Positions 10,177 to 62,164 of a DNA stretch of 64,000 nucleotides are shown piece after piece. The DNA is taken from positions 62,001 to 126,000 of IMG/VR virus record IMGVR_UViG_3300047445_000186. The stretch is one strand, 5' to 3'. The position numbers and the translations under genes are program-made. Every line of letters begins with the position of its first letter. Within the stretch, counting starts at the first letter, position 1. Below the pieces are notes generated by a model, which did no database searches, had not been told where the DNA came from, and saw only the letters and a program-made list of their open reading frames with translations.

Positions 10177-10913
10177 TGGACCGTGAAGCATTGCGACTAG
10201 CAGCAGCAAGCCGTAGGAACGAAGCAGGTTACCAGCCTGTCCGAGCCACGTGGCCTTGCGAATTCTGCCTGCGCGACTTCCAGACCGAGAACGGTTTCAT
10301 GAATCACCACTGCCCTGAACGAGCGAAGCTCGAGGAGATGCGTTCACCTCGTGGCCAAGCAGCTTATGCGTACTACGCAGAGTGGATGCGTCTTCAAAAG
10401 CGCTCCGTTCCTGATGCAGAACGGTTCATGAACTCGCGACAGTGGAACTACTTCTTGAAGTTCACGGATTGGTCTGAGAAGACCGCGGTTCCGAGACCGA
10501 ATCAGTTCATCAAGCTGATGGTTGAGACGGCCACGCAACCAGTGCTGTGGTGTCGTGACAACACGTACGCAATGTACCTCCAGTGGTACGACAACGTGTA
10601 CCCACCGACACAGCAGTTCATTGAGACGTACGACGCACTCGCCTCGTACGCTCGAGATCTGGAAGTGCCAATCTCTGGAGTGTACCCCGCGATCGGAGCA
10701 ATGGAGATCGCGCGACTCGTTCGTCGCCGGAAACTCTCGCCTTGGTTGCTCGTCGTCTCTCAGAACTTCCTGAACTGGGTGCGAGCTCTGCCTCCAATGG
10801 AGCGTGATGTCCTCTCTGAAGCGATCAACTTCAGCGCGTACGCCCAGAAGCTGAAGCAGAACCCTGAACTGGCGCGTGAATTCGCGTCTGCATGTGAACT
10901 TGAAAATGTCTAA
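10176..10913 (+). CDS. conserved hypothetical protein with N-terminal zinc finger
   Basis: CEFC-x12-HHC; TAATG coupling. Confidence 0.8.
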   Translation: MDREALRLAAASRRNEAGYQPVRATWPCEFCLRDFQTENGFMNHHCPERAKLEEMRSPRGQAAYAYYAEWMRLQKRSVPDAERFMNSRQWNYFLKFTDWSEKTAVPRPNQFIKLMVETATQPVLWCRDNTYAMYLQWYDNVYPPTQQFIETYDALASYARDLEVPISGVYPAIGAMEIARLVRRRKLSPWLLVVSQNFLNWVRALPPMERDVLSEAINFSAYAQKLKQNPELAREFASACELENV

Positions 10914-47714: not shown

Positions 47715-47764
47715 TCCCGAAGATCAAGGTTCTCGAACAGACGATCTTGATCTACAATAGAAGT

Positions 47765-48040
47765 ACTGCAGCAATGCAGTGATTGCCGTAATTCGGACTG
47801 ACTTGATGGATTTTGGACGGGGGTTCGACTCCCCCCACCTCCACCAAAAGAAGCTTGATCGCAGGATTCTTCTGATGGGGGTGCCATGGTTTCGACAAGG
47901 TTACTGAGATGACGTACGCGGCAGGAGAGACGACCGACCTAATCGGCGTAAATGAAGTAAATGCTAACTCTGATAGCTTCCGTCTCGTCGCCTAAACAAC
48001 GACCCCGGTGAGGTCAGCCGCCTTATAAAGAAACGGTTAG
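47765..48040 (+). ncRNA. ssrA: circularly permuted (two-piece) tmRNA
   Basis: Acceptor piece first: GGACGGGGGTTCGACTCCCCC-CACCTCC-A-CCA ending 47846. A 30-nt spacer follows, then the coding piece GGGGGTG-CCATGGTTTCGAC from 47877. The acceptor helix pairs fully with G3-U70. Resume context GTAAAT-GCT; tag ANSDSFRLVA* at 47963-47995. TACAAT at 47753. Outer ends are approximate. Confidence 0.9.
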
Positions 48041-48090
48041 AAAATAGAAAGTTGATCAAGCCTCGGCCGAAGTCCTTTTGATTTTTCGCT

Positions 48091-54082: not shown

Positions 54083-54529
54083 ATGAAATTCGGTCTGATC
54101 GTGGAGATCAACGAACTCCTGAGCGAAGGTGCTGCAGAAGGTTTTGATCCAAGCGGCAAATTTGTAGGCTGGTCACTGCGACTGCTGGCGACTGCCTCTG
54201 GCCACAAGGTCTCTCCAGGTCTTGGGGCCATTCATGGTGACGTGATCTTCTTCAAGAACGAATTAGAAGCCCGTGCAGCGGTCAAGAAAGCTGGCATGGA
54301 CGGATTCCGGTTCGCGACTCCAGCAGAATTCAAGCTCCTGAAGGCGAATGGATTCGGTATTCGTCTGAAGGAAGAAGTAGTCGTGCACGACATGGGCGAC
54401 GGCCTGAAGGCTTACTCGATCTTGAAGGACAGCTCCTGGCACAAGAACGCCTACAAGGAAGTTCCGAAGGACGCCTGGTCGATCGGTAAGTTCGTGACCC
54501 TGCACAGACAAGATCGTCGTCAAGACTGA
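54083..54529 (+). CDS. late protein (MK...ELLSEG N-terminus)
   Basis: TGATCATG coupling. Confidence 0.8.
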   Translation: MKFGLIVEINELLSEGAAEGFDPSGKFVGWSLRLLATASGHKVSPGLGAIHGDVIFFKNELEARAAVKKAGMDGFRFATPAEFKLLKANGFGIRLKEEVVVHDMGDGLKAYSILKDSSWHKNAYKEVPKDAWSIGKFVTLHRQDRRQD

Positions 54530-54535
54530 TCCCGA

Positions 54536-54567
54536 GCGAGATCCCGTGTGAGAACGCCGGATCTCGC
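54536..54567 (+). terminator. hairpin ending the late unit
   Basis: GCGAGATCC...GGATCTCGC followed by an AT-rich tract. Confidence 0.6.
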
Positions 54568-54577
54568 TATATAGATT

Positions 54578-54590
54578 TATAATTCATTCA
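54578..54590 (+). promoter_or_regulatory. promoter of the tRNA array leader
   Basis: TATAAT-TCATTCATGCGC, nearly identical to TATAAT-TCACTCATGCGC before the CUA tRNA at 49133. Confidence 0.65.
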
Positions 54591-55018
54591 TGCGCTGCTG
54601 CAAAGCAACGTAGACAACCGGATAGAGTAACTTCAAATGTACGCAACGTCAGTAACAGTCGGATATACATCAAGCCCAGTGCTTGGTGGTACCTCGCCTG
54701 CGCTCGCCTTGCCACTGGAGTTGACCCTCAGCTAAAGTTCTAACGAACCAAACGCAACGAGGGTCTAGACGAAAGTCGAGACCCTCGAGTGGTATCTGGA
54801 AGTTGATAAACGGTCATCCTGATAACTGATGAGTCAGTGATGATTAAGAAGATTACAATAACTCATCGACGCTGATTGAACATCGTTTCAACAGCAGCAA
54901 ATCTGAAAAGATCTGCAGTTCATTAAAAATTTAGAACACCAATCAAGCGCGCAGCTTGATGATCTGATCCGGTCTCGCAGATGCGACAAAGGTGAAAGAG
55001 AATTACTGCGCAGCTTTT

Positions 55019-55094
55019 ACCCGGTTAGCTCAGTTGGTAGAGCGGCGTCATGACATGGCGTAGGTCGTTGGTTCAAACCCAACACCGGGTACCA
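55019..55094 (+). tRNA. tRNA-Val(GAC)
   Basis: ACCCGGT/ACCGGGT acceptor; loop ATGACAT; TTCAAAC T loop; CCA. Confidence 0.85.
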
Positions 55095-55303
55095 TTGGAA
55101 ATCGCTCTTGTGACATCTTCTAACATGGAAAGATTCGCGGTGAGTATCGTAAAAATGCTGGTTTCGAGATCCAGCTGTCATTCGAGTGATTCCCAATGGT
55201 AAGAAAATCCTTGTTGTGAGGGTGGAAAGCGGAACACTGGCCATTTCGGTAAATCCTTTTGGTTGCACGCAGTTTTGAGTACATTCAACAGTCAATGAGG
55301 TAT

Positions 55304-55392
55304 GGGCCCGCTGTCCTTGGAGAGATAAGCTCGCTGTAAACGAGTGGCACGCAAATAAGTCTGAACTGGTTCGATTCCAGTCGGTCCCACCA
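55304..55392 (+). tRNA. tRNA-Tyr(GTA)
   Basis: GCTCG-CTGTAAA-CGAGT; long variable arm; CCA. Confidence 0.8.
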
Positions 55393-55400
55393 AATAACTT

Positions 55401-55483
55401 TCGCTTCAACCGTTGTGGTAACGGCCCGACTTTGAATCGGTGGTCACGAAAACTGATGAGGTTCGATTCCTCGTAGCGATCCA
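55401..55483 (+). tRNA. atypical tRNA-Gln(TTG)
   Basis: CCCGA-CTTTGAA-TCGGT; extended variable region; TTCGATT T loop; CCA. Confidence 0.65.
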
Positions 55484-55499
55484 AATTGAAGAACACCTT

Positions 55500-55586
55500 G
55501 CCCAGGTGGCGGAATTGGTAGACGCGCAGCGTTGAGGTCGCTGTGTCCGAAAGGACGTGGAGGTTCGAGTCCTCTCCTGGGCACCA
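55500..55586 (+). tRNA. tRNA-Leu(GAG)
   Basis: CAGCG-TTGAGGT-CGCTG; canonical long variable arm; CCA. Confidence 0.95.
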
Positions 55587-55681
55587 TGAAAATAAGAACA
55601 AAAACAAACACGGAACGATGTTGTCCTCGCAACATCGGGAATGTGAGGTCGCAGAAGCGATCTAAAACCGAGGCGTACTAA

Positions 55682-55774
55682 CCGTACTGATGAGCTGGTG
55701 AAACTCCAGCGAAACGCACTGAGAAAAGTTCATCGAGGTAAGAACTCTGAACGTAGTACCAGTAGCGTATACGG
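55682..55774 (+). ncRNA. type I hammerhead ribozyme
   Basis: Stem I CCGTA/TACGG; core CTGATGA; stem II GCTGG/CCAGC; GAAA; stem III ACGC/GCGT; GUA cleavage triplet with the cut after 55769. Confidence 0.85.
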
Positions 55775-55889
55775 GACAATGTGGTGAAGTTAAATGCAGT
55801 GAGTGCACTTACTGTATGATGCACCTTTGGTCAGCTTACATGCTGGTCAAGTTCAAGATCGGACCTTGATCGTTGCACCCGACCAATTT

Positions 55890-55965
55890 GGGCTTAAGCA
55901 TTGGGGTTGCGGGAACGCCTTGCAAGTGTTCTGTCAGTGGAGTTCGATTCTCCCTAGGTCCACCA
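55890..55965 (+). tRNA. tRNA-Cys(GCA)
   Basis: AACGC-CTTGCAA-GTGTT; CCA. Confidence 0.8.
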
Positions 55966-56024
55966 GAATGTTTCTCATTGTAGACAATGTACACAATGAG
56001 AAACAGTTTAAGAATGCACTTTGT

Positions 56025-56098
56025 CAGAGTGTGGTGACAAGTGGACGTCGACCGGGTTTGGAACCTGGAATATGCCGGTTCGAGGCCGGCCACTCTGA
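56025..56098 (+). tRNA. tRNA-Pro(TGG)-like, no encoded CCA, inside a 20-bp inverted repeat
   Basis: CCGGG-TTTGGAA-CCTGG; flanks 56012-56031 and 56091-56110 are perfect complements. Confidence 0.6.
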
Positions 56099-56113
56099 CA
56101 AAGTGCATTCGAT

Positions 56114-56190
56114 CGGAGATTAGCGCAGTCTGGTAGCGCATCTGCTTTGGGAGCAGAGGGTCAGAGGTTCGAATCCTCTATCTCCGACCA
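56114..56190 (+). tRNA. tRNA-Pro(TGG)
   Basis: Canonical CGGAGAT acceptor; TCTGC-TTTGGGA-GCAGA; CCA. Confidence 0.95.
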
Positions 56191-56340
56191 AATATCTCTC
56201 CATGACACGGGGAGTACAATGTGATAAGTTCCGTGTCCTTAGTCGGTGAAAGTTCGCGATAGCGCCGGAAACGGTTTGACTCGAGCAAGATGAAGATCGC
56301 TAGATCTTGCCGGGAAGCACTTGGTTATGCTTCAGCTATT

Positions 56341-56414
56341 TTGGTAGTAGCATGTGTGGGATATGCAGCCCTTTGGTGGGAAGATCACAGGTTCAAATCC
56401 TGTCTACTGATCCA
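56341..56414 (+). tRNA. degenerate tRNA-like gene (Pro TGG-like anticodon region)
   Basis: Acceptor, D and T arms and CCA present; anticodon stem poorly paired. Confidence 0.45.
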
Positions 56415-56531
56415 GGTAAGTCTCAGTCCTTCTAATGACTGAGTGGTGGAACGTCGCGTTGAAACCAATGCGGCCCCAGAACGTGAAATTGAATGTGGTC
56501 TGAACATCATTTGTTTACCACAGGAGAAATC

Positions 56532-56810
56532 ATGTTCAAAGTTCAATACGATGTCAATGTTCCAGGCGCATGGCGCGGTGCTCGGACTCTGTCCCCAGGC
56601 GATCTCGGCGAAAACCCTTCGGGGTGGACGATCACGGGTGTTGTCCATGAGGATTATTTCGAGTGGGTGAATTACTTTGAAGCGAAGCATCCTACCTTCG
56701 GGTGGGTACGTGGAGACTTCGAGTCGGAAATCCAGGCAAAATCTAAGAAAGCGTTCGCGCACTTCTTAGAGAATCATCCGCCAAATGAGTGGGATTACGG
56801 CGATATCTGA
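56532..56810 (+). CDS. conserved hypothetical protein in tRNA array
   Basis: AGGAG SD; GWTITG...EDYFEWVN...GDFE...WDYGDI. Confidence 0.8.
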   Translation: MFKVQYDVNVPGAWRGARTLSPGDLGENPSGWTITGVVHEDYFEWVNYFEAKHPTFGWVRGDFESEIQAKSKKAFAHFLENHPPNEWDYGDI

Positions 56811-56852
56811 AAGAACTCTCCTCGGTATGAGATAAAAAGGCCGTGAAATTCT

Positions 56853-56928
56853 GGGGGATTAGCTCATCTGGGAGAGCGGCAGCTTTGCAAGCTGTAGGTG
56901 ATCGGTTCGAGTCCGATATCCTCCACCA
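56853..56928 (+). tRNA. tRNA-Ala(TGC)
   Basis: G3-U70; GCAGC-TTTGCAA-GCTGT; CCA. Confidence 0.95.
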
Positions 56929-57146
56929 AATTTGATCCTAACGGCGCTAATAACCGAGATAACGCCGTGAAGAACATGAACTGCTGGCAAAGTCGATAAA
57001 TTCCTTCTCAGGATGTGCAGTTGTTCAGGGTCAATTCGTTTATTGGTTGTAGGTGCTGCCCCACGTAAAGTACAGAACCTTCAGAATTCCGTGATCAGAT
57101 ACGGCCGCCTAACAAGCGGCAAGAGTCCTCTGATCGCGATCCAATT

Positions 57147-57220
57147 TCGACGCTAGTGTAGTAGATGCACGCCGTCCATGAGTGGCGGAAGGAAAGGTGC
57201 AAATCCTTTGTGTTGATCCA
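57147..57220 (+). tRNA. atypical tRNA-like gene (anticodon position TGA, short variable loop)
   Basis: Full cloverleaf spacing and CCA, but A33 and T loop TGCAAAT. Confidence 0.5.
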
Positions 57221-57225
57221 TCTTT

Positions 57226-57297
57226 GCGGGTGGTTTGTGGAATACGTTTAGCCTTCCAAGCTGAAAGATGCAGGTTCGAACCCTGTCGCCCGCTCCA
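57226..57297 (+). tRNA. tRNA-Gly(TCC)
   Basis: TTAGC-CTTCCAA-GCTGA; U73; CCA. Confidence 0.9.
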
Positions 57298-57384
57298 TAT
57301 CTGAACGCTCTTGCGGTAAAGAGTGCAGCGCCTGCAGCGTGTCTTCTCCCTCGAGGACAAGTGCATTCGAGAGCGTTCAGATAT

Positions 57385-57470
57385 GGGTATTCGTCAGAGC
57401 TGGAGAGCTGAAGCGGGCTGTAACCCCGTTCCTTATAGGTGAGCAGGTTCGATTCCTGCAGTACCCACCA
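57385..57470 (+). tRNA. tRNA-Tyr(GTA), second copy
   Basis: GCGGG-CTGTAAC-CCCGT; variable arm; CCA. Confidence 0.88.
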
Positions 57471-57488
57471 GAATTTTAGGAGTTCAAA

Positions 57489-57752
57489 TTGCGTTGTAAA
57501 CCAGGTATCCTCGCCGAGATTATCGGCGGTGTAGATGGTCTGAACAAAGGAAAGATCGTTGAAGTCGTTGCGTTCGCAGGAATGCACGTTGAATTCGGTC
57601 CAATCTGGGAAATCAGGTCACGCACTCTCGATCTCGTTTCTGAGTACGGTGGAATGTCTAAGGACGCGCACTGTGCTGACATTTGGTTGAAGCCGATTCC
57701 AACGGATCCGCTCCCACCAAAGGTGAAGACAAAAGACCTCGAGCTCGTATGA
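57489..57752 (+). CDS. hypothetical protein
   Basis: AGGAG SD with TTG start; WLKPI motif; ATGA overlap. Confidence 0.7.
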   Translation: MRCKPGILAEIIGGVDGLNKGKIVEVVAFAGMHVEFGPIWEIRSRTLDLVSEYGGMSKDAHCADIWLKPIPTDPLPPKVKTKDLELV

Positions 57753-57979
57753 TCGTGTGTCTCTGCTACCGAGTCTCTTCGAATGAGATTCGCGACGCAG
57801 CGAAGTTCTTGAACGCGAAGACCATTGAGGAACTCCAATGTGGTCTCGAAGTCTGCCAGAATTGTGAAGTGTGCAAGCCGTACATTGAAGCGATTCTGCA
57901 GGAAACGGTTCCTTCCGTATCGCATGGGTTAAGCGATGGTGATCACGATACCACAATCGAGACGCGGCTACTGTGTTAA
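57749..57979 (+). CDS. bfd: Bfd-like [2Fe-2S] protein
   Basis: MIVCLCYRVSSNEIRDA...VCQNCEVCKPYIEAIL, the Bfd CxC...CxxC pattern. Confidence 0.75.
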   Translation: MIVCLCYRVSSNEIRDAAKFLNAKTIEELQCGLEVCQNCEVCKPYIEAILQETVPSVSHGLSDGDHDTTIETRLLC

Positions 57980-58140
57980 TGTGGTGAGATGTACTCTAGA
58001 GTCTCGGCCATGAACGTTCCTGTTCATTGGAGATACGAATATTCCCTGAGTTGGTTTATGAGAAAGTTCACGTTAACAACTGCTCAAAGCTGGTAGGTAA
58101 GCTACAAGTCGTAATGTTGGGAAACGTCGCGCAGATATAT

Positions 58141-58216
58141 GCCCTTGTAGCTCAGTGGTAGAGCACCCGCCTTGTAAGCGGTAGGTCGCGAGTTCAATTC
58201 TCCGCCAGGGGCACCA
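58141..58216 (+). tRNA. tRNA-Thr(TGT)
   Basis: CCCGC-CTTGTAA-GCGGT; CCA. Confidence 0.9.
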
Positions 58217-58224
58217 TGAATTAT

Positions 58225-58304
58225 TGCGGGGTAGGGGAGTCTGGTCGTCCCCGCCAGTCTCATAAGCTGGAGATCGTGCGGTTCAAATCCCACCCCCGCA
58301 ACCA
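58225..58304 (+). tRNA. tRNA-Met(CAT), initiator-like acceptor
   Basis: GCGGGG acceptor; loop CTCATAA; CCA. Confidence 0.8.
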
Positions 58305-58349
58305 ATTCCCTGAGTTGATGTTGAACTCTAATACAAGAAATCATCACCT

Positions 58350-58426
58350 GCCCTGTTACGCTAATTGGTAGTGCGGACAGTTTCAAACACTGTTGGTTCT
58401 CGGTTCGAATCCGAGATGGGGCACCA
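58350..58426 (+). tRNA. tRNA-Leu(CAA) with short variable loop
   Basis: ACAGT-TTCAAAC-ACTGT; 5-nt variable loop; A73; CCA. Confidence 0.78.
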
Positions 58427-58431
58427 GATTT

Positions 58432-58508
58432 GCGGTCGTGGTGTAATTGGTAAACGCCTCCGGTTCAGAACCGTAGTCCTGTGGGTTCGAGTCCCACCGA
58501 CCGCACCA
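58432..58508 (+). tRNA. tRNA-Leu(CAG) with short variable loop
   Basis: TCCGG-TTCAGAA-CCGTA; short variable loop; A73; CCA. Confidence 0.8.
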
Positions 58509-58642
58509 GAACGAAACGTGCAGCAATGCACCGATATCGCCGAACGTGGTAGGCGTAGAGCATGGGCTAAATCGATGATGCAGCATGCCGCTAAGTAACA
58601 ACCAACTCTTGTTGATTATCAGACTAAATCATCAGAATTCAT

Positions 58643-58752
58643 GCGCGTGTTGCGGAACGGCACACGCTGTCGGTAAAGAGCCGACGACCCAGACGTTCGA
58701 CTCGTCTTAAACTATGGAGGGGATGTAGGTTCGAATCCTACCGCGCGCACCA
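58643..58752 (+). ncRNA. Leu-like tRNA with an extra T-arm-like hairpin
   Basis: GCGCGTG/CGCGCGC acceptor, Leu-type D arm, GTCGG-TAAAGAG-CCGAC, extra AGACG-TTCGACT-CGTCT, then GTAGG-TTCGAAT-CCTAC, A, CCA. Confidence 0.6.
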
Positions 58753-58874
58753 GGTTTTGATCGATGCCTTAATTGGGTATCTGTGTTCCAGACGGATTGT
58801 TCTTCGGTCTGGACGTGAAGTACTCGCTCCCACAGAGTAAGAGAACATGAGGGGAGTCTCGATCAAATTAGTTT

Positions 58875-59005
58875 GGAGTCGTGGTGTAATGGTAGCACAC
58901 GTACAAACTCGATTTCTCCATTTTGTCGCTTCGGCGACCGCACTGAAATTGATTATCTCCCGTAACGAGCGGGGACCGCGGTTCGAATCCCGGTAGACTC
59001 CACCA
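58875..59005 (+). ncRNA. tRNA-like RNA with large insertion replacing the anticodon arm
   Basis: GGAGTC/GACTCC acceptor, GGTGTAATGGTAGCAC D arm, GGTTCGAATCC T arm, ACCA; 131 nt total. Confidence 0.65.
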
Positions 59006-59010
59006 AATAT

Positions 59011-59086
59011 AGGCATGACGCTGAAATGGTTTCAGGCCGCGGTCACATCGCGGATTTAGGGAGTTCGATTCTCCACTTGCCCACCA
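59011..59086 (+). tRNA. tRNA-Val(CAC)
   Basis: CCGCG-GTCACAT-CGCGG; imperfect acceptor; CCA. Confidence 0.7.
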
Positions 59087-59096
59087 TTGTTTTGAG

Positions 59097-59244
59097 AATG
59101 TTTATCAGAAAGTCTAACCGCTGACAGTTGGTTATCTACTTTTACTGCTTAAAAAATCCGGAGATGGTTCAATTCCTCTCATGGTCTGCTGGTGCCGGAG
59201 ACCAATGCCCAACTTCACTTTTGTTCGGCGTTCTGATAAACATT
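59097..59244 (+). ncRNA. candidate structured RNA closed by a 14-bp inverted repeat
   Basis: AATGTTTATCAGAA/TTCTGATAAACATT; internal hairpins, including a GGTTCAATTCC T-loop-like element. Confidence 0.45.
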
Positions 59245-59257
59245 TTGAAAGAGTATC

Positions 59258-59491
59258 ATGAAAATGGTAACCCGCGACGATTATCCTAATTTGGATCCGG
59301 AAGTTTCAGTGCACAATTGCACTGCAGAAAATCCGATGCCTCCAGAGGTTGGAGATCGCGCTCAAGAGCTGAAGCAGCTTTGGGTACATCATGATACTGA
59401 AGAAATTTGGGAGAGCGATTCAGGCCGCTTTATGCGCGTTCGCTGTCTGCACTGCAAGTACGAGTACACAATCGACTTCGGTGATGATTGA
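59258..59491 (+). CDS. small zinc-ribbon-like protein
   Basis: HNC...WVH...RCLHCKY. Confidence 0.65.
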   Translation: MKMVTRDDYPNLDPEVSVHNCTAENPMPPEVGDRAQELKQLWVHHDTEEIWESDSGRFMRVRCLHCKYEYTIDFGDD

Positions 59492-59496
59492 GATTT

Positions 59497-59571
59497 GGGT
59501 CCTTAGCACAGCGGTAGTGCGGCTCCTTTACACGGAGTAGGTCGTAGGTTCGATCCCTACAGGACCCACCA
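59497..59571 (+). tRNA. tRNA-Val(TAC)
   Basis: GCTCC-TTTACAC-GGAGT; CCA. Confidence 0.93.
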
Positions 59572-59628
59572 AGTTTTGTCACCCTACCCAAGGGGTCCAT
59601 GAGAGTGGTTGGAAGCATCATGGCAAGT

Positions 59629-59703
59629 GTTTACGTAGCTCAGTGGAAAGAGCGCCATCCATCGCGTGGTGGAGACGCAGGTTCGAATCCTGTCGTAGTT
59701 CCG
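59629..59703 (+). tRNA. degenerate tRNA (anticodon position ATC), no CCA
   Basis: Canonical D and T arms; loop CCATCGC; weak acceptor. Confidence 0.45.
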
Positions 59704-59809
59704 TGACAAATTATTTTGCTGCTTGGTAAGACAAGCTAACGGAGGATGGGAAGTACGTCGCCATGAAGGCGATACGGCGGATACCCCACCGGCCTTGCAG
59801 CTCCAATTT

Positions 59810-59901
59810 GGAAGATGATACCTGATGGTGACGGTGGCTCCCTGCTAAGGAGTTCGTCCGGTGATGAACCGGATTCGGTTCGATTCCGACCTCTTCCTCC
59901 A
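59810..59901 (+). tRNA. tRNA-Ser(GCT)
   Basis: GCTCC-CTGCTAA-GGAGT; long variable arm; CCA. Confidence 0.9.
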
Positions 59902-59905
59902 ATAT

Positions 59906-60015
59906 GGCGCATTGACCTGTAGTAGCGCTTAAATGCAGGGCGATATGGTATCAAGCACGAAGGCTGCTCGAGCAGCTAGAGGCAATGAGGTTCGAATCCT
60001 CCCAGTGCGCCGCCA
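59906..60015 (+). ncRNA. tRNA-like RNA with 9-bp acceptor stem
   Basis: GGCGCATTG/CAGTGCGCC, G, CCA; GAGG-TTCGAAT-CCTC T arm; CCTGTA/TGCAGG and GCTGC-TCGA-GCAGC arms. Confidence 0.6.
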
Positions 60016-60032
60016 ATTTAGTGGAGTGAGAC

Positions 60033-60338
60033 ATGAAACTGCGAAACATCATCCTCGCTCTGAAGGACCAACTGCCGCTCAGACGGCTGATCAGAAATCT
60101 TTGGAACGGTCGTGTGACTGGTCTGACGCATCCAAGAACGCACTTGAATGCGAACGGCAAACCAAAGATCATGTACAACACAAAAGCGACTGCAGTGAAA
60201 GCTGCAGCTGCGATGGCCGCGAAGCGTGGCGTACCGTTCGGAAATTGGAAATGCATGCATTGCGATGGTTTCCACATCGGCAAGAACCGATCGTACGACA
60301 ACTTCAAGGCAAATCAGAACATGGAAGAGTCTCCCTGA
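60033..60338 (+). CDS. basic hypothetical protein with CxxC
   Basis: GGAG SD; WKCMHCDGFHIG; 3' end overlaps the tRNA-Ser gene. Confidence 0.75.
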   Translation: MKLRNIILALKDQLPLRRLIRNLWNGRVTGLTHPRTHLNANGKPKIMYNTKATAVKAAAAMAAKRGVPFGNWKCMHCDGFHIGKNRSYDNFKANQNMEESP

Positions 60339-60413
60339 TGGTGATGGGGTCCGCCTCGAAAGCGGTTCTGTCCACGCGAGTGGGCAACGGTTCGATTCCG
60401 TACTCTTCCTCCA
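60323..60413 (+). tRNA. tRNA-Ser(CGA)
   Basis: TCCGC-CTCGAAA-GCGGT; long variable arm; CCA. Confidence 0.9.
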
Positions 60414-60420
60414 GAACAGT

Positions 60421-60475
60421 GGGTGGGTTTGTGGCAAACCCGGGAATGCAGGTTCGAGTCCTGTCCCATCCACCA
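60421..60475 (+). ncRNA. 55-nt anticodon-less mini-tRNA with alanine identity elements
   Basis: GGGTGGG/CCCATCC acceptor with G3-U70, A73, CCA; GCAGG-TTCGAGT-CCTGT T arm; only 20 nt between acceptor and T arm. Confidence 0.75.
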
Positions 60476-60701
60476 ATAGTTGAGGGCCTTCGATCGCATC
60501 GAGGGCGTGGTTAGACTGCGCAGTCGGACGAAGATCGTGGCCACGGTCAATGTCCTAAAAGTTGTTTGGTATGTGAGGTTCAACTCCTCACCAACTTTAA
60601 CCACCTCATTCAATTTAAGCGGGACCGCTGGGTCAACAAGTCTGCATAAGCCGGAGGTGCTTGCACCGAAGAGAGATACAGCCCAGGTTAAAACCGCTTT
60701 T

Positions 60702-60790
60702 GGAGAGTTGTCCCTGATGGTGATGGGCACCGCTTGGAAAGCGGTTGCACTGCGAAAGCGGTGACGGTTCGATTCCGTAGCTCTCCTCCA
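60702..60790 (+). tRNA. tRNA-Ser(GGA)
   Basis: ACCGC-TTGGAAA-GCGGT; long variable arm; CCA. Confidence 0.92.
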
Positions 60791-60797
60791 GAATTCC

Positions 60798-60874
60798 GCG
60801 CGAATGGCCGAATCGGTATAGGCAAGAGGCTTAAACCCTCTTTGTTGTCGGTTCGAGTCCGACTTCGCGCACCA
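60798..60874 (+). tRNA. tRNA-Leu(TAA) with short variable loop
   Basis: AGAGG-CTTAAAC-CCTCT; short variable loop; A73; CCA. Confidence 0.82.
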
Positions 60875-60879
60875 AACAT

Positions 60880-60962
60880 GGCCTCGTGGATAGTGCAAAT
60901 CGGTACAGCTACCGGGTTTAGAACCCGGACCATTGTGAGTTCGAGTCTCACCGAGGCTACCA
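60880..60962 (+). tRNA. tRNA-Leu(TAG) with short variable loop
   Basis: CCGGG-TTTAGAA-CCCGG; 6-nt variable loop; enlarged D loop; CCA. Confidence 0.8.
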
Positions 60963-60971
60963 TGAATTTTT

Positions 60972-61047
<76 letters not shown>

Positions 61048-61052
61048 GATAT

Positions 61053-61138
61053 GCGTGAGGTCGTGGGACCTATGGCAAAGCGCGAATCGGCCGAGAACGC
61101 GCCGAAGTCGCTTGGTTCGACTCCAAGCTCCCGCTCCA
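61053..61138 (+). ncRNA. Gly-like tRNA variant with expanded anticodon loop
   Basis: GCG acceptor start, U73, CCA, canonical T arm; GCGCG-AATCGGCCGAGAA-CGCGC arm. Confidence 0.55.
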
Positions 61139-61159
61139 ATATTGGTGTTCTAAATTTAT

Positions 61160-61249
61160 GGAGACGTGGCAGAGTGGCCTATCGCTCCGGCCTTGAAAAC
61201 CGGCGACCCTTAACCGGGTCCGTGAGTTCGAATCTCACCGTCTCCGCCA
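61160..61249 (+). tRNA. tRNA-Ser(TGA)
   Basis: Loop CTTGAAA; long variable arm; G73; CCA. Confidence 0.93.
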
Positions 61250-61254
61250 TCTAT

Positions 61255-61343
61255 GTTCAGTGTGGTGAGCAATTGTCGAATTGGTACAGCCCCTTGCGTT
61301 TAGCGAGGCCACTTTGCGGGTTCGAATCCCGTCACTGAACTCC
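61255..61343 (+). ncRNA. degenerate tRNA-like gene with 8-bp acceptor
   Basis: GTTCAGTG/CACTGAAC; GCGGG-TTCGAAT-CCCGT; CCTTG-CGTTTAG-CGAGG; no CCA. Confidence 0.45.
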
Positions 61344-61344
61344 T

Positions 61345-61392
61345 CCGTTACAGTCGTTACACATTCACGCGCAGGATGTAGTACAATTCACC
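61345..61392 (+). promoter_or_regulatory. early/middle promoter with tandem CGTTACA boxes
   Basis: CCGTTACAGTCGTTACAC-ATTCACG...GGATGTAG-TACAAT-TCAC. Confidence 0.7.
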
Positions 61393-61416
61393 ATCGACAC
61401 TGAAACGGAGATCCTC

Positions 61417-61794
61417 ATGACCGAAAAGACCATCGACGAAAAGAAGCGCGAATTCTACGTCGGCCACGTGAACAGCGGCCTGGAAGGCGCGAAGCGCAAG
61501 ATCGCGAAGTTCGCCGCCGACGTCGTCGAGAACCCCGAGCATGCGATGACCTGGTCTGACGACACGTTCACCACCGCGGCGAAGCACACGATGTACACGC
61601 GGATCGCACAGGGCCTGGGCCGTGAAGAATGCACGCTCCAGATGGTGTACGACACGCTCCAGTCCGAGTTCCTGAGCAAGGCTCGGTACATCAACAATCG
61701 CTCGACTTCGACCGGCTCGAACCGCATGGCTGACTGCACAGTCTCGGTCCTGGCCGAAGAGCTCGAGTTCCTGGGCCGCGGGTTCCTGGGCTGA
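61417..61794 (+). CDS. hypothetical early protein
   Basis: GGAG SD; strong codon bias. Confidence 0.85.
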   Translation: MTEKTIDEKKREFYVGHVNSGLEGAKRKIAKFAADVVENPEHAMTWSDDTFTTAAKHTMYTRIAQGLGREECTLQMVYDTLQSEFLSKARYINNRSTSTGSNRMADCTVSVLAEELEFLGRGFLG

Positions 61795-61798
61795 TCAG

Positions 61799-62164
61799 AT
61801 GAGCACCAAGATCTACCCGATGCAGCTCAGCGAGAGCACCGCGCGGAAACTCGTGTCGAACCACCTCAGGGTTCCGTTCGAACGTGAAATGCGCGCGCGG
61901 TACGGAGACGTCTCGCTCACGTACTACGCCACTCTCCAGGAGAACGGCGAGGTCGATGTGTTCGTGCACTACGTGAGCGAAGGGTTCGGCATCCAATCGG
62001 CCGGCCCGCTCATTCGCGAGAAGATCCGGCCGTACGATGCGGAGCGGATCGCCGAGCTGGAAGAACAGCGGAAGTTCGAGATCGCTCGTGCCGAGTACGA
62101 ACGCCGCCAATCAGTGAAGGCTCTCGCCGAGATCGACAAGATCAAGAAGAAGCTGTTCGCCTGA
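61799..62164 (+). CDS. hypothetical protein
   Basis: Packed ORF. Confidence 0.8.
   Translation: MSTKIYPMQLSESTARKLVSNHLRVPFEREMRARYGDVSLTYYATLQENGEVDVFVHYVSEGFGIQSAGPLIREKIRPYDAERIAELEEQRKFEIARAEYERRQSVKALAEIDKIKKKLFA

What the first reader, a model, noticed from the sequence alone, without database searches (positions are those of the whole stretch)
55682..55774. Type I hammerhead ribozyme embedded in the tRNA array
Seen: every conserved core nucleotide and all three helices are present (CCGTA/TACGG, CUGAUGA, GCTGG/CCAGC, GAAA, ACGC/GCGU, GUA site), with an insertion of roughly 45 nt in stem III that holds a further hairpin. It lies between tRNA-Leu(GAG) and tRNA-Cys. Inference: host-independent self-processing of the polycistronic tRNA transcript, or generation of a defined end for the structured RNA that follows (55775-55885, ending ...CCGACCA).
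Basis: partly seen in the sequence, partly recalled or inferred. Interest (0 to 1): 0.66.

Follow-up and report, generated by a model that had tools for sequence, protein, structure and literature searches.

The report
Hammerhead ribozyme inside phage tRNA array
A genuine self-cutting hammerhead RNA sits among the tRNA genes of a 332-kb soil phage. It is placed to cut the long tRNA transcript two bases ahead of an odd tRNA-shaped RNA, an arrangement that recurs in other phages and offers a testable job for phage hammerheads.

Summary
Window 55682-55774 (+) carries a complete type I hammerhead: stem I CCGUA/UACGG, core CUGAUGA, a 5-bp stem II hairpin, GAA, and stem III ACGC/GCGU. Stem III extends by four more pairs and holds a 38-nt insert. 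The cleavage site follows A55769.

A relaxed descriptor hit 1 of 400 dinucleotide shuffles of the window. The element alone folds into the hammerhead junction as its minimum-energy structure.

It belongs to a large phage class with the same stem II. I found 137 unique cores in IMG/VR and metagenomes; 121 of them parse as type I, with covarying stems I and III. Long stem III inserts are common in this class. Rfam models miss the class, including its compact canonical members.

It is the only hammerhead in the 332-kb genome. A distantly related jumbo phage with syntenic genes, and a 22-kb contig fragment with a similar array, each carry one hammerhead inside their tRNA arrays. In six cases the cut falls 2-19 nt upstream of a tRNA or tRNA-like gene.

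The most likely function is self-cleavage of the array transcript, which frees the 5' end of a 114-nt cloverleaf-like RNA ending in ACCA (55772-55885). Cleavage itself is untested, because no RNA data exist. This is a new member of a known kind in an apparently undescribed context.

The parts
55500..55586 (+). tRNA-Leu(GAG), the upstream neighbour, with an encoded CCA end
   Evidence: ARAGORN; Rfam tRNA model, 53.1 bits
55587..55681 (+). 95-nt spacer with two predicted hairpins (55609-55645 and 55646-55663). It ends in the AA (55680-81) that flanks stem I in most class members. It holds GGGAATGTGAGG at 55637-55648.
   Evidence: Fold; 'AA' flank present in 74 of 121 class members; the same 12-mer lies upstream of the L029 hammerhead
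55682..55686 (+). Hammerhead stem I, 5' strand (CCGUA)
55687..55693 (+). Catalytic core C3-A9 (CUGAUGA)
55694..55710 (+). Stem II hairpin: GCUGG, loop UGAAACU, CCAGC
   Evidence: the same stem II occurs in 52 IMG/VR loci and at least 120 metagenome loci; 12 other unique members have the same loop
55711..55713 (+). Core G12 A13 A14
55714..55768 (+). Stem III: ACGC/GCGU plus ACUG/CAGU across bulged A55764, enclosing a 38-nt insert with its own hairpin
   Evidence: Folds; stem III inserts of 30 nt or more in 32 of 121 class members
55769..55769 (+). H17 = A. The predicted cut is between 55769 and 55770. It would leave a 2',3'-cyclic phosphate upstream and a 5'-OH downstream.
   Evidence: Position follows from the hammerhead consensus; H17 is A in 35 of 121 class members; the end chemistry is established hammerhead knowledge, not tested here
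55770..55774 (+). Stem I, 3' strand (UACGG). Bases 55772-74 are shared with the closing stem of the downstream RNA.
55772..55885 (+). RNA 'X': a 114-nt predicted four-way junction. Its closing stem is CGGG.CAAUG paired with CGUUG..CCCG. It has three hairpins, the last with a 5-bp stem and a 7-nt loop. It ends in a single-stranded ACCA, 4 nt before the next tRNA.
   Evidence: Fold -38.5 kcal/mol, z = -2.70. Not called a tRNA by ARAGORN with or without introns or by Rfam at E up to 10. No homologue in G001, G002 or elsewhere in G000.
55890..55965 (+). Next tRNA, read as Ala(UGC) by ARAGORN; atypical, with an encoded CCA end
   Evidence: absent from the Rfam tRNA hits

Best explanation
This is a functional type I hammerhead self-cleaving ribozyme of a widespread phage class, transcribed as part of the + strand tRNA array of a 332-kb jumbo phage.

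Proposed mechanism:
1. As the transcript emerges, stems II and III and the 5-bp stem I form.
2. The RNA cuts itself between A55769 and U55770.
3. The ribozyme body stays on the upstream fragment (tRNA-Leu, spacer and hammerhead) with a 2',3'-cyclic phosphate end.
4. The downstream fragment starts with 5'-OH-UA.
5. The short stem I falls apart, and C55772-G55775 re-pair with CCCG at 55878-81. This closes the terminal stem of a 114-nt cloverleaf-like RNA that ends in ACCA.
6. The 3' end of that RNA is set in the usual way, by RNase P cutting at the next tRNA 4 nt further on, followed by trimming.

The hammerhead therefore splits the array transcript and supplies a near-mature 5' end for a tRNA-shaped RNA that the standard tRNA models do not recognise.

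Shown here: the motif, its homology, stem covariation, thermodynamic accessibility, and the recurrent placement just 5' of tRNA genes. Inferred: co-transcription, cleavage in vivo, the refolding step, and the purpose.
For: Motif and fold:
- The core is complete and canonical, with three helices.
- The hammerhead junction is the minimum-energy fold of the element. It is within 1.2 kcal/mol of the minimum in contexts of 190-466 nt.
- A relaxed descriptor hit 1 of 400 shuffles.

Class membership:
- The same stem II and core occur in 52 IMG/VR and at least 120 metagenome stretches. Of 137 unique cores, 121 parse as type I.
- The window's features match the class: a 5-bp stem I (81 of 121), an AA 5' flank (74 of 121), and a long stem III insert (32 of 121).
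- Stem I covaries at all 5 pairs and stem III at its variable pairs. 96% of cells are paired, against 26-40% when the partners are slid.

Genomic context:
- It is the only hammerhead in the 332-kb genome.
- G001 (342.6 kb) has syntenic ORFs at 31-55% amino-acid identity. G001 and the fragment G002 each have one hammerhead inside their tRNA arrays.
- Their stems show compensatory changes. Stem I is ACGCA/UGCGU in G001 and AAACGCA/UGCGUUU in G002, and AUCGCA/UGCGAU in L165.
- The cut-to-gene distance is 6 nt in L165 (tRNA-Leu), 6 nt in L007 (tRNA, 30.9 bits), 9 nt in L145, 15 nt in L153 and 19 nt in L033. It is 2 nt here.
- Every tRNA near these hammerheads lies on the hammerhead's strand.
- X is stably folded (z = -2.70) and ends in ACCA, 4 nt before the next tRNA, like the array's tRNAs.
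Against: - There is no direct evidence of cleavage or of an RNA end. No RNA run holds this phage.
- No Rfam hammerhead family reaches its gathering score.
- The stem I-stem II tertiary contact needed for fast cleavage at cellular Mg2+ is not identified.
- With upstream sequence included, a 4-bp GUAC/GUAC hairpin that sequesters the stem I 5' strand is slightly favoured, by 1.2 kcal/mol.
- In the relatives the hammerhead precedes ordinary tRNAs that RNase P can process. In all cases it leaves a leader. It therefore does not make a mature 5' end and is not needed for tRNA maturation as such.
- X has no detectable homologue, so its reality as an RNA gene rests on one sequence and its fold.
- In L110, L112 and L128 the same class follows a tRNA directly. 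In L164 it precedes a terminator-like hairpin. Placement 5' of a tRNA is therefore not universal.
Confidence: 0.6

Rival explanations
1. The hammerhead is active but acts as a generic transcript-partitioning or insulating element, as proposed for prophage hammerheads that flank genes. It would uncouple the fate of the upstream and downstream RNA. For example, a 5'-OH end could evade 5'-monophosphate-dependent decay, and a cyclic phosphate end could block 3' exonucleases. On this view its position next to X is incidental and it has no specific role in making X or any tRNA.
For: Most class members sit just upstream of a ribosome-binding site and start codon, not of a tRNA. 'AGGAGG' is the most common downstream 6-mer. 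In L145 and L153 the hammerhead follows a stop codon and separates an ORF from a tRNA. Some members follow a tRNA or precede a terminator-like hairpin. Perreault et al. 2011 proposed processing of long phage transcripts into gene-length units (PMC3088659).
Against: The 2-nt spacing and the three bases shared between stem I and X's closing stem look designed. Six cases show the cut 2-19 nt upstream of a tRNA or tRNA-like gene. This rival differs from the best explanation mainly in emphasis.
Confidence: 0.25
2. The motif is an inactive or decaying relic. It could be a hitch-hiking selfish element that once moved into the array, retained by chance and contributing nothing to the phage.
For: The function of prokaryotic hammerheads is an open question (PMC6155905). 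The tertiary contact is not identified. The array holds many degenerate tRNA-like sequences, so decayed elements are tolerated here. The long stem III insert could slow folding.
Against: Every core position is canonical and all stems are intact. A distant syntenic relative (31-55% protein identity) and a further array-bearing fragment keep one hammerhead in the array, with compensatory stem changes. The sequence is identical in contigs from three further rhizosphere runs.
Confidence: 0.1
3. The element acts as a type III-like or switching structure. The upstream GCGUA (55673-77) would pair with ACGC (55714-17) in place of the downstream strand. This would give a different cut site after A55677, or an off-state that delays cleavage.
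For: Rfam's only hit reads it this way: Hammerhead_3, 21.9 bits, E = 0.019, over 55670-55720. The upstream strand is transcribed first.
Against: In that reading stem I would be a 9-nt stretch with at most 2 bp, so no active hammerhead can form. The score is far below the gathering score of 48.5. The upstream repeat is not present in L007 or L033. The downstream stem III has 8 bp against 4.
Confidence: 0.03
4. The match to the hammerhead consensus arose by chance.
For: The bare pattern CTGATGA-N6-36-CGAAA is expected 0.75 times per window.
Against: The full descriptor hit 1 of 400 shuffles. The stem II and loop are identical to other phage hammerheads. Relatives have homologous elements at the equivalent place.
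Confidence: 0.02

Closest known systems
Type I hammerhead ribozymes of phages and prophages (Perreault et al. 2011, PMC3088659; review PMC6155905)
   Same: Same catalytic core, three-helix junction and type I topology. Intergenic position in phage DNA. The proposed role is cutting long phage transcripts into units.
   Different: This one lies inside a jumbo-phage tRNA array, immediately 5' of a tRNA-shaped RNA. Those papers describe hammerheads flanking protein genes. I found no mention there of tRNA-array hammerheads.
Rfam hammerhead models: Hammerhead_3 (RF00008), Hammerhead_HH9 (RF02275), RAGATH-1-hammerhead (RF03152)
   Same: They are the best-scoring Rfam families for the window element (Hammerhead_3, 21.9 bits) and for a compact class member (HH9 21.5 bits, RAGATH-1 16.4 bits). 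RAGATH-1 shares the type I topology, a 5-bp stem I and an A-rich 5' flank.
   Different: All scores are far below the gathering scores of 48.5, 52 and 56.3. The Hammerhead_3 alignment uses the wrong stem III strand. This phage class is not covered by any current Rfam model.
Theta ribozymes: minimal HDV-like ribozymes next to phage tRNAs (Kienbeck et al. 2024, PMC10879173)
   Same: They are small self-cleaving ribozymes in phage genomes with the cut site adjacent to tRNA genes, proposed to replace or assist protein enzymes in tRNA end formation.
   Different: The fold is different (HDV-like versus hammerhead). Theta ribozymes are linked to tRNA 3' ends, whereas this hammerhead cuts on the 5' side and leaves a short leader. 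That paper does not mention hammerheads.
Hammerheads with large insertions ('discontinuous' hammerheads such as the mammalian CLEC2 3'-UTR example; recalled from memory, not checked here)
   Same: The conserved core is split by a long non-conserved insert in one helix.
   Different: The insert here is only 38-47 nt, lies in stem III, and is a common variant within this phage class (32 of 121 members).
Engineered hammerhead-tRNA or hammerhead-guide RNA fusions, in which stem I is formed with the first bases of the downstream RNA (own knowledge)
   Same: The design logic is the same. The 3' strand of stem I overlaps the start of the RNA to be released, so self-cleavage gives a defined 5'-OH end.
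   Different: Those are synthetic and leave no extra bases. This one is natural and leaves a 2-nt leader (6-19 nt in relatives).

Membership tests
Hammerhead ribozyme | Conserved core: C3 U4 G5 A6 N7 G8 A9, and G12 A13 A14 | tested here: met
   CTGATGA at 55687-93 and GAA at 55711-13
Hammerhead ribozyme | Three helices around the core, an A15.1-U16.1 pair, and a cleavage-site base H17 that is not G | tested here: met
   Stem I has 5 bp, stem II 5 bp, stem III 4+4 bp. The pair is A55714-U55768. H17 is A55769. This is the minimum-energy fold.
Hammerhead ribozyme | Helices supported by compensatory changes among homologues | tested here: met
   On 16 class members, stem I has changes on both sides at all 5 pairs, and stem III at its variable pair. 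The covariation score is 0.394 against 0.095 for shuffles. The array homologues L007, L033 and L165 have different but complementary stems I and III. Stem II could not vary, because the search pattern fixed it.
Hammerhead ribozyme | Reaches the gathering score of an Rfam hammerhead family | tested here: not met
   There is no hit at gathering threshold. The best is Hammerhead_3 at 21.9 bits against 48.5. The test has little force, because a compact canonical class member scores only 21.5 bits against 52, and L006 and L012 give no hit at E up to 0.1.
Hammerhead ribozyme | Site-specific self-cleavage giving 2',3'-cyclic phosphate and 5'-OH ends | not testable with these tools
   No RNA run holds the phage. 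Contigs cannot show RNA ends.
Hammerhead ribozyme | Tertiary contact between stems I and II, needed for fast cleavage at physiological Mg2+ | tested here: inconclusive
   The class keeps a 7-nt loop II (UGARAYU) and an AA just 5' of stem I, and the window has both. No pairing or known loop-receptor interaction was demonstrated.
Type I topology | Stem I is open and stems II and III are closed by loops | tested here: met
   121 of 137 class members parse the same way.
Theta / HDV-like tRNA-associated ribozymes | Nested double-pseudoknot HDV-like fold that cuts at its own 5' end, downstream of a tRNA | tested here: not met
   No HDV-like family appears among the Rfam hits at E up to 10 in 54500-62000. 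The element is a hammerhead that cuts near its 3' end. It is an analogue in role, not a member.
tRNA (for the downstream RNA X, 55772-55885) | Cloverleaf with a 7-bp acceptor stem, D arm, 7-nt anticodon loop and canonical T loop, recognised by tRNA models | tested here: not met
   ARAGORN finds nothing, with or without introns. The Rfam tRNA model gives no hit at E up to 10. The closing stem is 4+5 bp with an internal loop. The loops have 4, 6 and 7 nt. The T-like loop AUCGGAC departs from the consensus. X shares only the four-way junction, the 3' ACCA and its position in the array.

The most novel reading that the evidence does not exclude
Type I hammerheads are the 5'-side counterpart of theta (HDV-like) ribozymes in phages. 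They would be phage-encoded, protein-independent cutters that free the 5' ends of tRNAs and tRNA-like RNAs from array or mRNA-tRNA transcripts. In this phage the ribozyme would be required to make a non-canonical, CCA-ended tRNA-shaped RNA (X) that RNase P cannot recognise. X itself would be a new functional RNA, for example a decoy for host tRNA-targeting defences or a substrate of the phage's own CCA-adding and RNA-repair enzymes.
Probability: 0.25. Interest if true: 0.7.

Novelty: new member of a known kind. Interest (0 to 1): 0.5.

Why it matters
The roles of bacterial and phage hammerheads are still called an open question (PMC6155905). A hammerhead whose cut lies a few bases upstream of a tRNA or tRNA-like gene, recurring in several phage lineages, gives a concrete and testable function. 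That function is splitting tRNA-array transcripts and pre-setting 5' ends. It would complement the HDV-like theta ribozymes proposed for phage tRNA 3' ends (PMC10879173).

The work also exposes an annotation gap. This abundant phage class has at least 137 distinct cores in a capped sample and is present in isolated Pseudomonas phages. It is invisible to current Rfam hammerhead models and unannotated in GenBank records.

Tried and rejected
- **Rfam at gathering threshold** gave no hammerhead. In E-value mode it gave only a partial Hammerhead_3 hit that uses an upstream GCGUA as the stem III strand. I rejected that type III reading because stem I would have at most 2 bp and the repeat is not conserved in L007 or L033.
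- **My own covariance model R1** scores the window at 39.9 bits. The score comes from the core and stem II, which the search pattern had already fixed, and the 3' strand is aligned to a nearer spurious site. I do not count it as independent evidence.
- **RNA evidence.** No RNA run holds the phage. DNA contigs from four rhizosphere runs cover 55557-56150 in three of them with no differences, so there is no natural variation to test pairing.
- **Close relatives found through a neighbouring protein** gave only a near-identical 234.5-kb contig.
- **GenBank phages** hold no homologue of the hammerhead-plus-X locus. The tRNA region of Ralstonia phage RsoM2USA has no hammerhead.
- **BLAST of X and of the upstream spacer** against G001, G002 and G000 found no homologue.
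- **Promoter and terminator scans** of the array were at chance level.
- **Upstream AGUAGG/GUGAGG words** looked recurrent but occur in only 12 of 115 upstream flanks, so they are not a general feature.
- **RtcB** is absent from the genome.
- **Literature searches** for hammerheads linked to phage tRNAs found nothing relevant in the held library. This does not prove that none exists.

Full report
**Source**

The window is bases 62001-126000 of a 331,776-bp IMG/VR virus record, estimated 94% complete. It is a jumbo phage from rhizosphere metagenomes. Positions 55019-61249 of the + strand hold about 24 ARAGORN-called tRNA genes. A permuted betaproteobacterial-type tmRNA lies upstream.

**Observation**

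- Stem I: CCGUA (55682-86) pairs with UACGG (55770-74).
- Core: CUGAUGA (55687-93).
- Stem II: GCUGG / CCAGC, closed by the loop UGAAACU (55694-55710).
- G12-A14: GAA (55711-13).
- Stem III: ACGC (55714-17) pairs with GCGU (55765-68), which includes the A15.1-U16.1 pair.
- H17: A55769.

Stem III continues for four more pairs, ACUG/CAGU, across a bulged A55764. It encloses a 38-nt insert with its own hairpin.

The element alone (55680-55776) folds into this three-way junction as both the minimum-energy and the centroid structure, with z = -2.66. When the hammerhead pairs are forced in contexts of 190, 304 and 466 nt, the energy is 1.2, 0.0 and 1.2 kcal/mol above the unconstrained minimum.

The bare core pattern is expected 0.75 times per window by chance. 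A full descriptor is much rarer. It required the exact core, all three stems of at least 4 bp with G-U allowed, and an insert of up to 140 nt. It hit 1 of 400 dinucleotide-preserving shuffles, and hit the real window only at this place. No ORF of note covers the element.

**Homology**

I scanned IMG/VR for the core with this stem II, using CTGATGAGCTGG-N5-9-CCAGCGAAAC. The scan returned 52 loci.

After removing duplicates there are 137 distinct cores, of which 121 parse as type I hammerheads. Within those 121:
- Stem I has exactly 5 bp in 81.
- The two bases 5' of stem I are AA in 74.
- H17 is C in 79, A in 35 and U in 7.
- Loop II is UGARAYU-like.
- Stem III holds an insert of 30 nt or more in 32.

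The window element fits the class on every count, including its insert.

On an alignment of 16 compact members, 96% of cells form standard pairs, against 26-40% when the partners are slid. All five stem I pairs and the variable stem III pair change on both sides. Stem II cannot vary, because the search pattern fixed it.

The same core occurs, unannotated, in isolated Pseudomonas phages of 56-59 kb.

**Rfam**

No hammerhead family reaches its gathering score. The only weak hit is Hammerhead_3, at 21.9 bits against 48.5. It pairs ACGC with an upstream GCGUA (55673-77) and leaves stem I with almost no pairs. I reject that reading.

The Rfam failure says little. L006 and L012, which are perfect compact type I members, give no hit at E up to 0.1. 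L024 reaches only 21.5 bits on HH9 and 16.4 bits on RAGATH-1-hammerhead. This phage class is simply not covered by the current models.

My own model R1 finds the window at 39.9 bits. That score comes from the pattern-selected core, and the 3' strand is mis-aligned, so I do not count it.

**Context and relatives**

- The element is the only credible hammerhead in the 332-kb genome.
- G001 is a 342,591-bp record with terminal repeats. It shares syntenic ORFs beside and inside the array at 31-55% amino-acid identity.
- G002 is a 22-kb fragment that holds 17 tRNAs.
- G001 and G002 each have one strong hammerhead, and in both it lies inside the tRNA array.
- Their stems differ from the window's in a compensatory way. 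Stem I is ACGCA/UGCGU in G001, AAACGCA/UGCGUUU in G002 and AUCGCA/UGCGAU in L165. Stem III has 9, 10 and 5 bp respectively, with inserts of 35-62 nt.

In several loci the cut site lies just upstream of a same-strand tRNA gene:

| Locus | Distance from cut | Downstream gene |
|---|---|---|
| L165 | 6 nt (exactly the stem I strand) | tRNA-Leu(UAG) |
| L007 / G002 | 6 nt | degenerate tRNA-Leu-like gene, 30.9 bits on the Rfam tRNA model |
| L145 | 9 nt | tRNA-Pro |
| L153 | 15 nt | tRNA-Pro |
| L033 / G001 | 19 nt | 86-nt tRNA |
| window | 2 nt | X |

All tRNAs found near class members are on the hammerhead's strand.

The placement is not universal. Most members precede a ribosome-binding site and start codon. 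Three follow a tRNA-Glu directly. One precedes a terminator-like hairpin.

**The downstream RNA, X**

From C55772 to A55885 the sequence folds into a four-way junction at -38.5 kcal/mol, with z = -2.70. Its parts are:
- a closing stem, CGGG.CAAUG paired with CGUUG..CCCG;
- a long irregular hairpin;
- a 9-10-bp hairpin;
- a hairpin with a 5-bp stem and a 7-nt loop;
- a free 3' ACCA.

It ends 4 nt before the next tRNA, as the array's tRNAs do, and they also carry encoded CCA.

X is not a tRNA by ARAGORN, with or without introns, or by the Rfam tRNA model at E up to 10. It has no detectable homologue. I therefore call it a tRNA-shaped RNA candidate and nothing more.

Bases 55772-74 belong both to hammerhead stem I and to X's closing stem, so the two folds exclude each other. 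The hammerhead partner is transcribed about 110 nt before X's 3' partner. This favours the order: fold the hammerhead, cut, release, then refold into X.

**Mechanism proposed**

Self-cleavage at 55769/55770 would split the array transcript. The ribozyme would stay on the tRNA-Leu fragment with a cyclic phosphate end. X would be released with a 5'-OH and a 2-nt leader. X's 3' end would come from ordinary RNase P cutting at the next tRNA, followed by trimming.

In role this parallels the HDV-like theta ribozymes that sit at phage tRNA 3' ends (PMC10879173), but on the 5' side and with a different fold.

The main rival is that the hammerhead is a generic transcript partitioner, as Perreault et al. 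proposed for prophage hammerheads (PMC3088659), with no special tie to X. The two views overlap. I give 0.6 to the specific reading and 0.25 to the generic one.

**What is missing**

- There is no RNA evidence. No RNA run holds the phage.
- DNA contigs from three other rhizosphere runs are identical across the element.
- The tertiary contact between stems I and II is not identified.
- A small competing GUAC/GUAC hairpin exists upstream.

**Literature**

In the held library I found hammerheads in phages and prophages (PMC3088659, PMC6155905) and tRNA-linked HDV-like ribozymes (PMC10879173). I found no report of hammerheads in phage tRNA arrays. The library lacks most subscription journals, so prior description cannot be excluded.

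**Verdict**

This is a real hammerhead: a new member of a known kind, in a context that seems undescribed and that offers a testable function. Interest 0.5.

Noticed in passing
window 47733-48086 (+): The phage encodes a permuted (two-piece) betaproteobacterial-type tmRNA. ARAGORN gives the tag peptide ANSDSFRLVA. Rfam scores are beta_tmRNA 130.9 bits and tmRNA_permuted 125 bits. This hints at a betaproteobacterial host.
   Followed up: no
window 58981, 59167, 59990, 60452, 60578, 61115, 61320 (+), in gaps of the tRNA array: Canonical T-arm motifs (GGTTCGA-like with flanking complementary arms, several followed by CCA) lie in stretches where neither ARAGORN nor the Rfam tRNA model calls a gene. 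The array seems to hold several more atypical or degenerate tRNA-like genes. Gaps of 200-670 nt remain unexplained.
   Followed up: partly
ARAGORN reads it as Ala(UGC), with the anticodon at the unusual position 32. The Rfam tRNA model does not detect it even at E up to 10.
   Followed up: partly
window 55637-55648 (+); L029 upstream of its hammerhead: The 12-mer GGGAATGTGAGG lies about 35 nt upstream of stem I. The identical 12-mer lies upstream of the hammerhead in an unrelated 34.7-kb contig (L029). Related AGUAGG/GUGAGG words occur near some other members, but in only 12 of 115 upstream flanks.
   Followed up: partly
window 55673-55677 and 55675-55687 (+): An upstream GCGUA duplicates the stem III 3' strand together with the cleavage-site base. 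A GUAC/GUAC hairpin can sequester the stem I 5' strand. Both are possible competing folds. Neither is conserved in L007 or L033.
   Followed up: partly
G000:138242-138610, G000:254052-254648, G000:49304-50479 (all outside the window): The phage encodes three proteins that could act on RNA ends. One is a CCA-adding-enzyme family protein (PF01743, 89.6 bits). One is a T4 Rnl1-like RNA ligase (PF09511, 88.8 bits). One is a 391-aa protein with a weak HD domain and a P-loop kinase domain (AAA_33, 69 bits). No RtcB is present. Together they could form an RNA heal-and-seal set acting on 5'-OH and cyclic-phosphate ends, which are the ends a hammerhead makes.
   Followed up: partly
L033 / G001:C1 about 221008-221093; G002 about 10762-10841: In G001 the RNA after the hammerhead is an 86-nt tRNA with a long variable arm (type II body) but a UGU (Thr) anticodon. 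This is an odd combination. In G002 it is a tRNA-Leu-like gene whose anticodon loop is reduced to 5 nt.
   Followed up: partly
L006, L012, L024 and the whole class; GenBank PQ738200.1, PQ758388.1, PQ758389.1: Compact, textbook type I hammerheads of this phage class fall far below every Rfam hammerhead gathering score. They are unannotated in isolated Pseudomonas phages. This is a coverage gap in current annotation.
   Followed up: yes
L110, L112, L128 (metagenome contigs); L164: In three contigs the hammerhead starts 0-7 nt after the CCA end of a tRNA-Glu(UUC). In L164 the cut is followed by a terminator-like hairpin with a U run and then tRNA-Ser. The links between hammerheads and tRNAs are therefore more varied than placement 5' of a tRNA.
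   Followed up: no
window 59629-59702 and 60880-60962 (+): ARAGORN calls tRNA-Asp with anticodon AUC and tRNA-Gly with anticodon ACC. A at position 34 is unusual for these families in bacteria.
   Followed up: no
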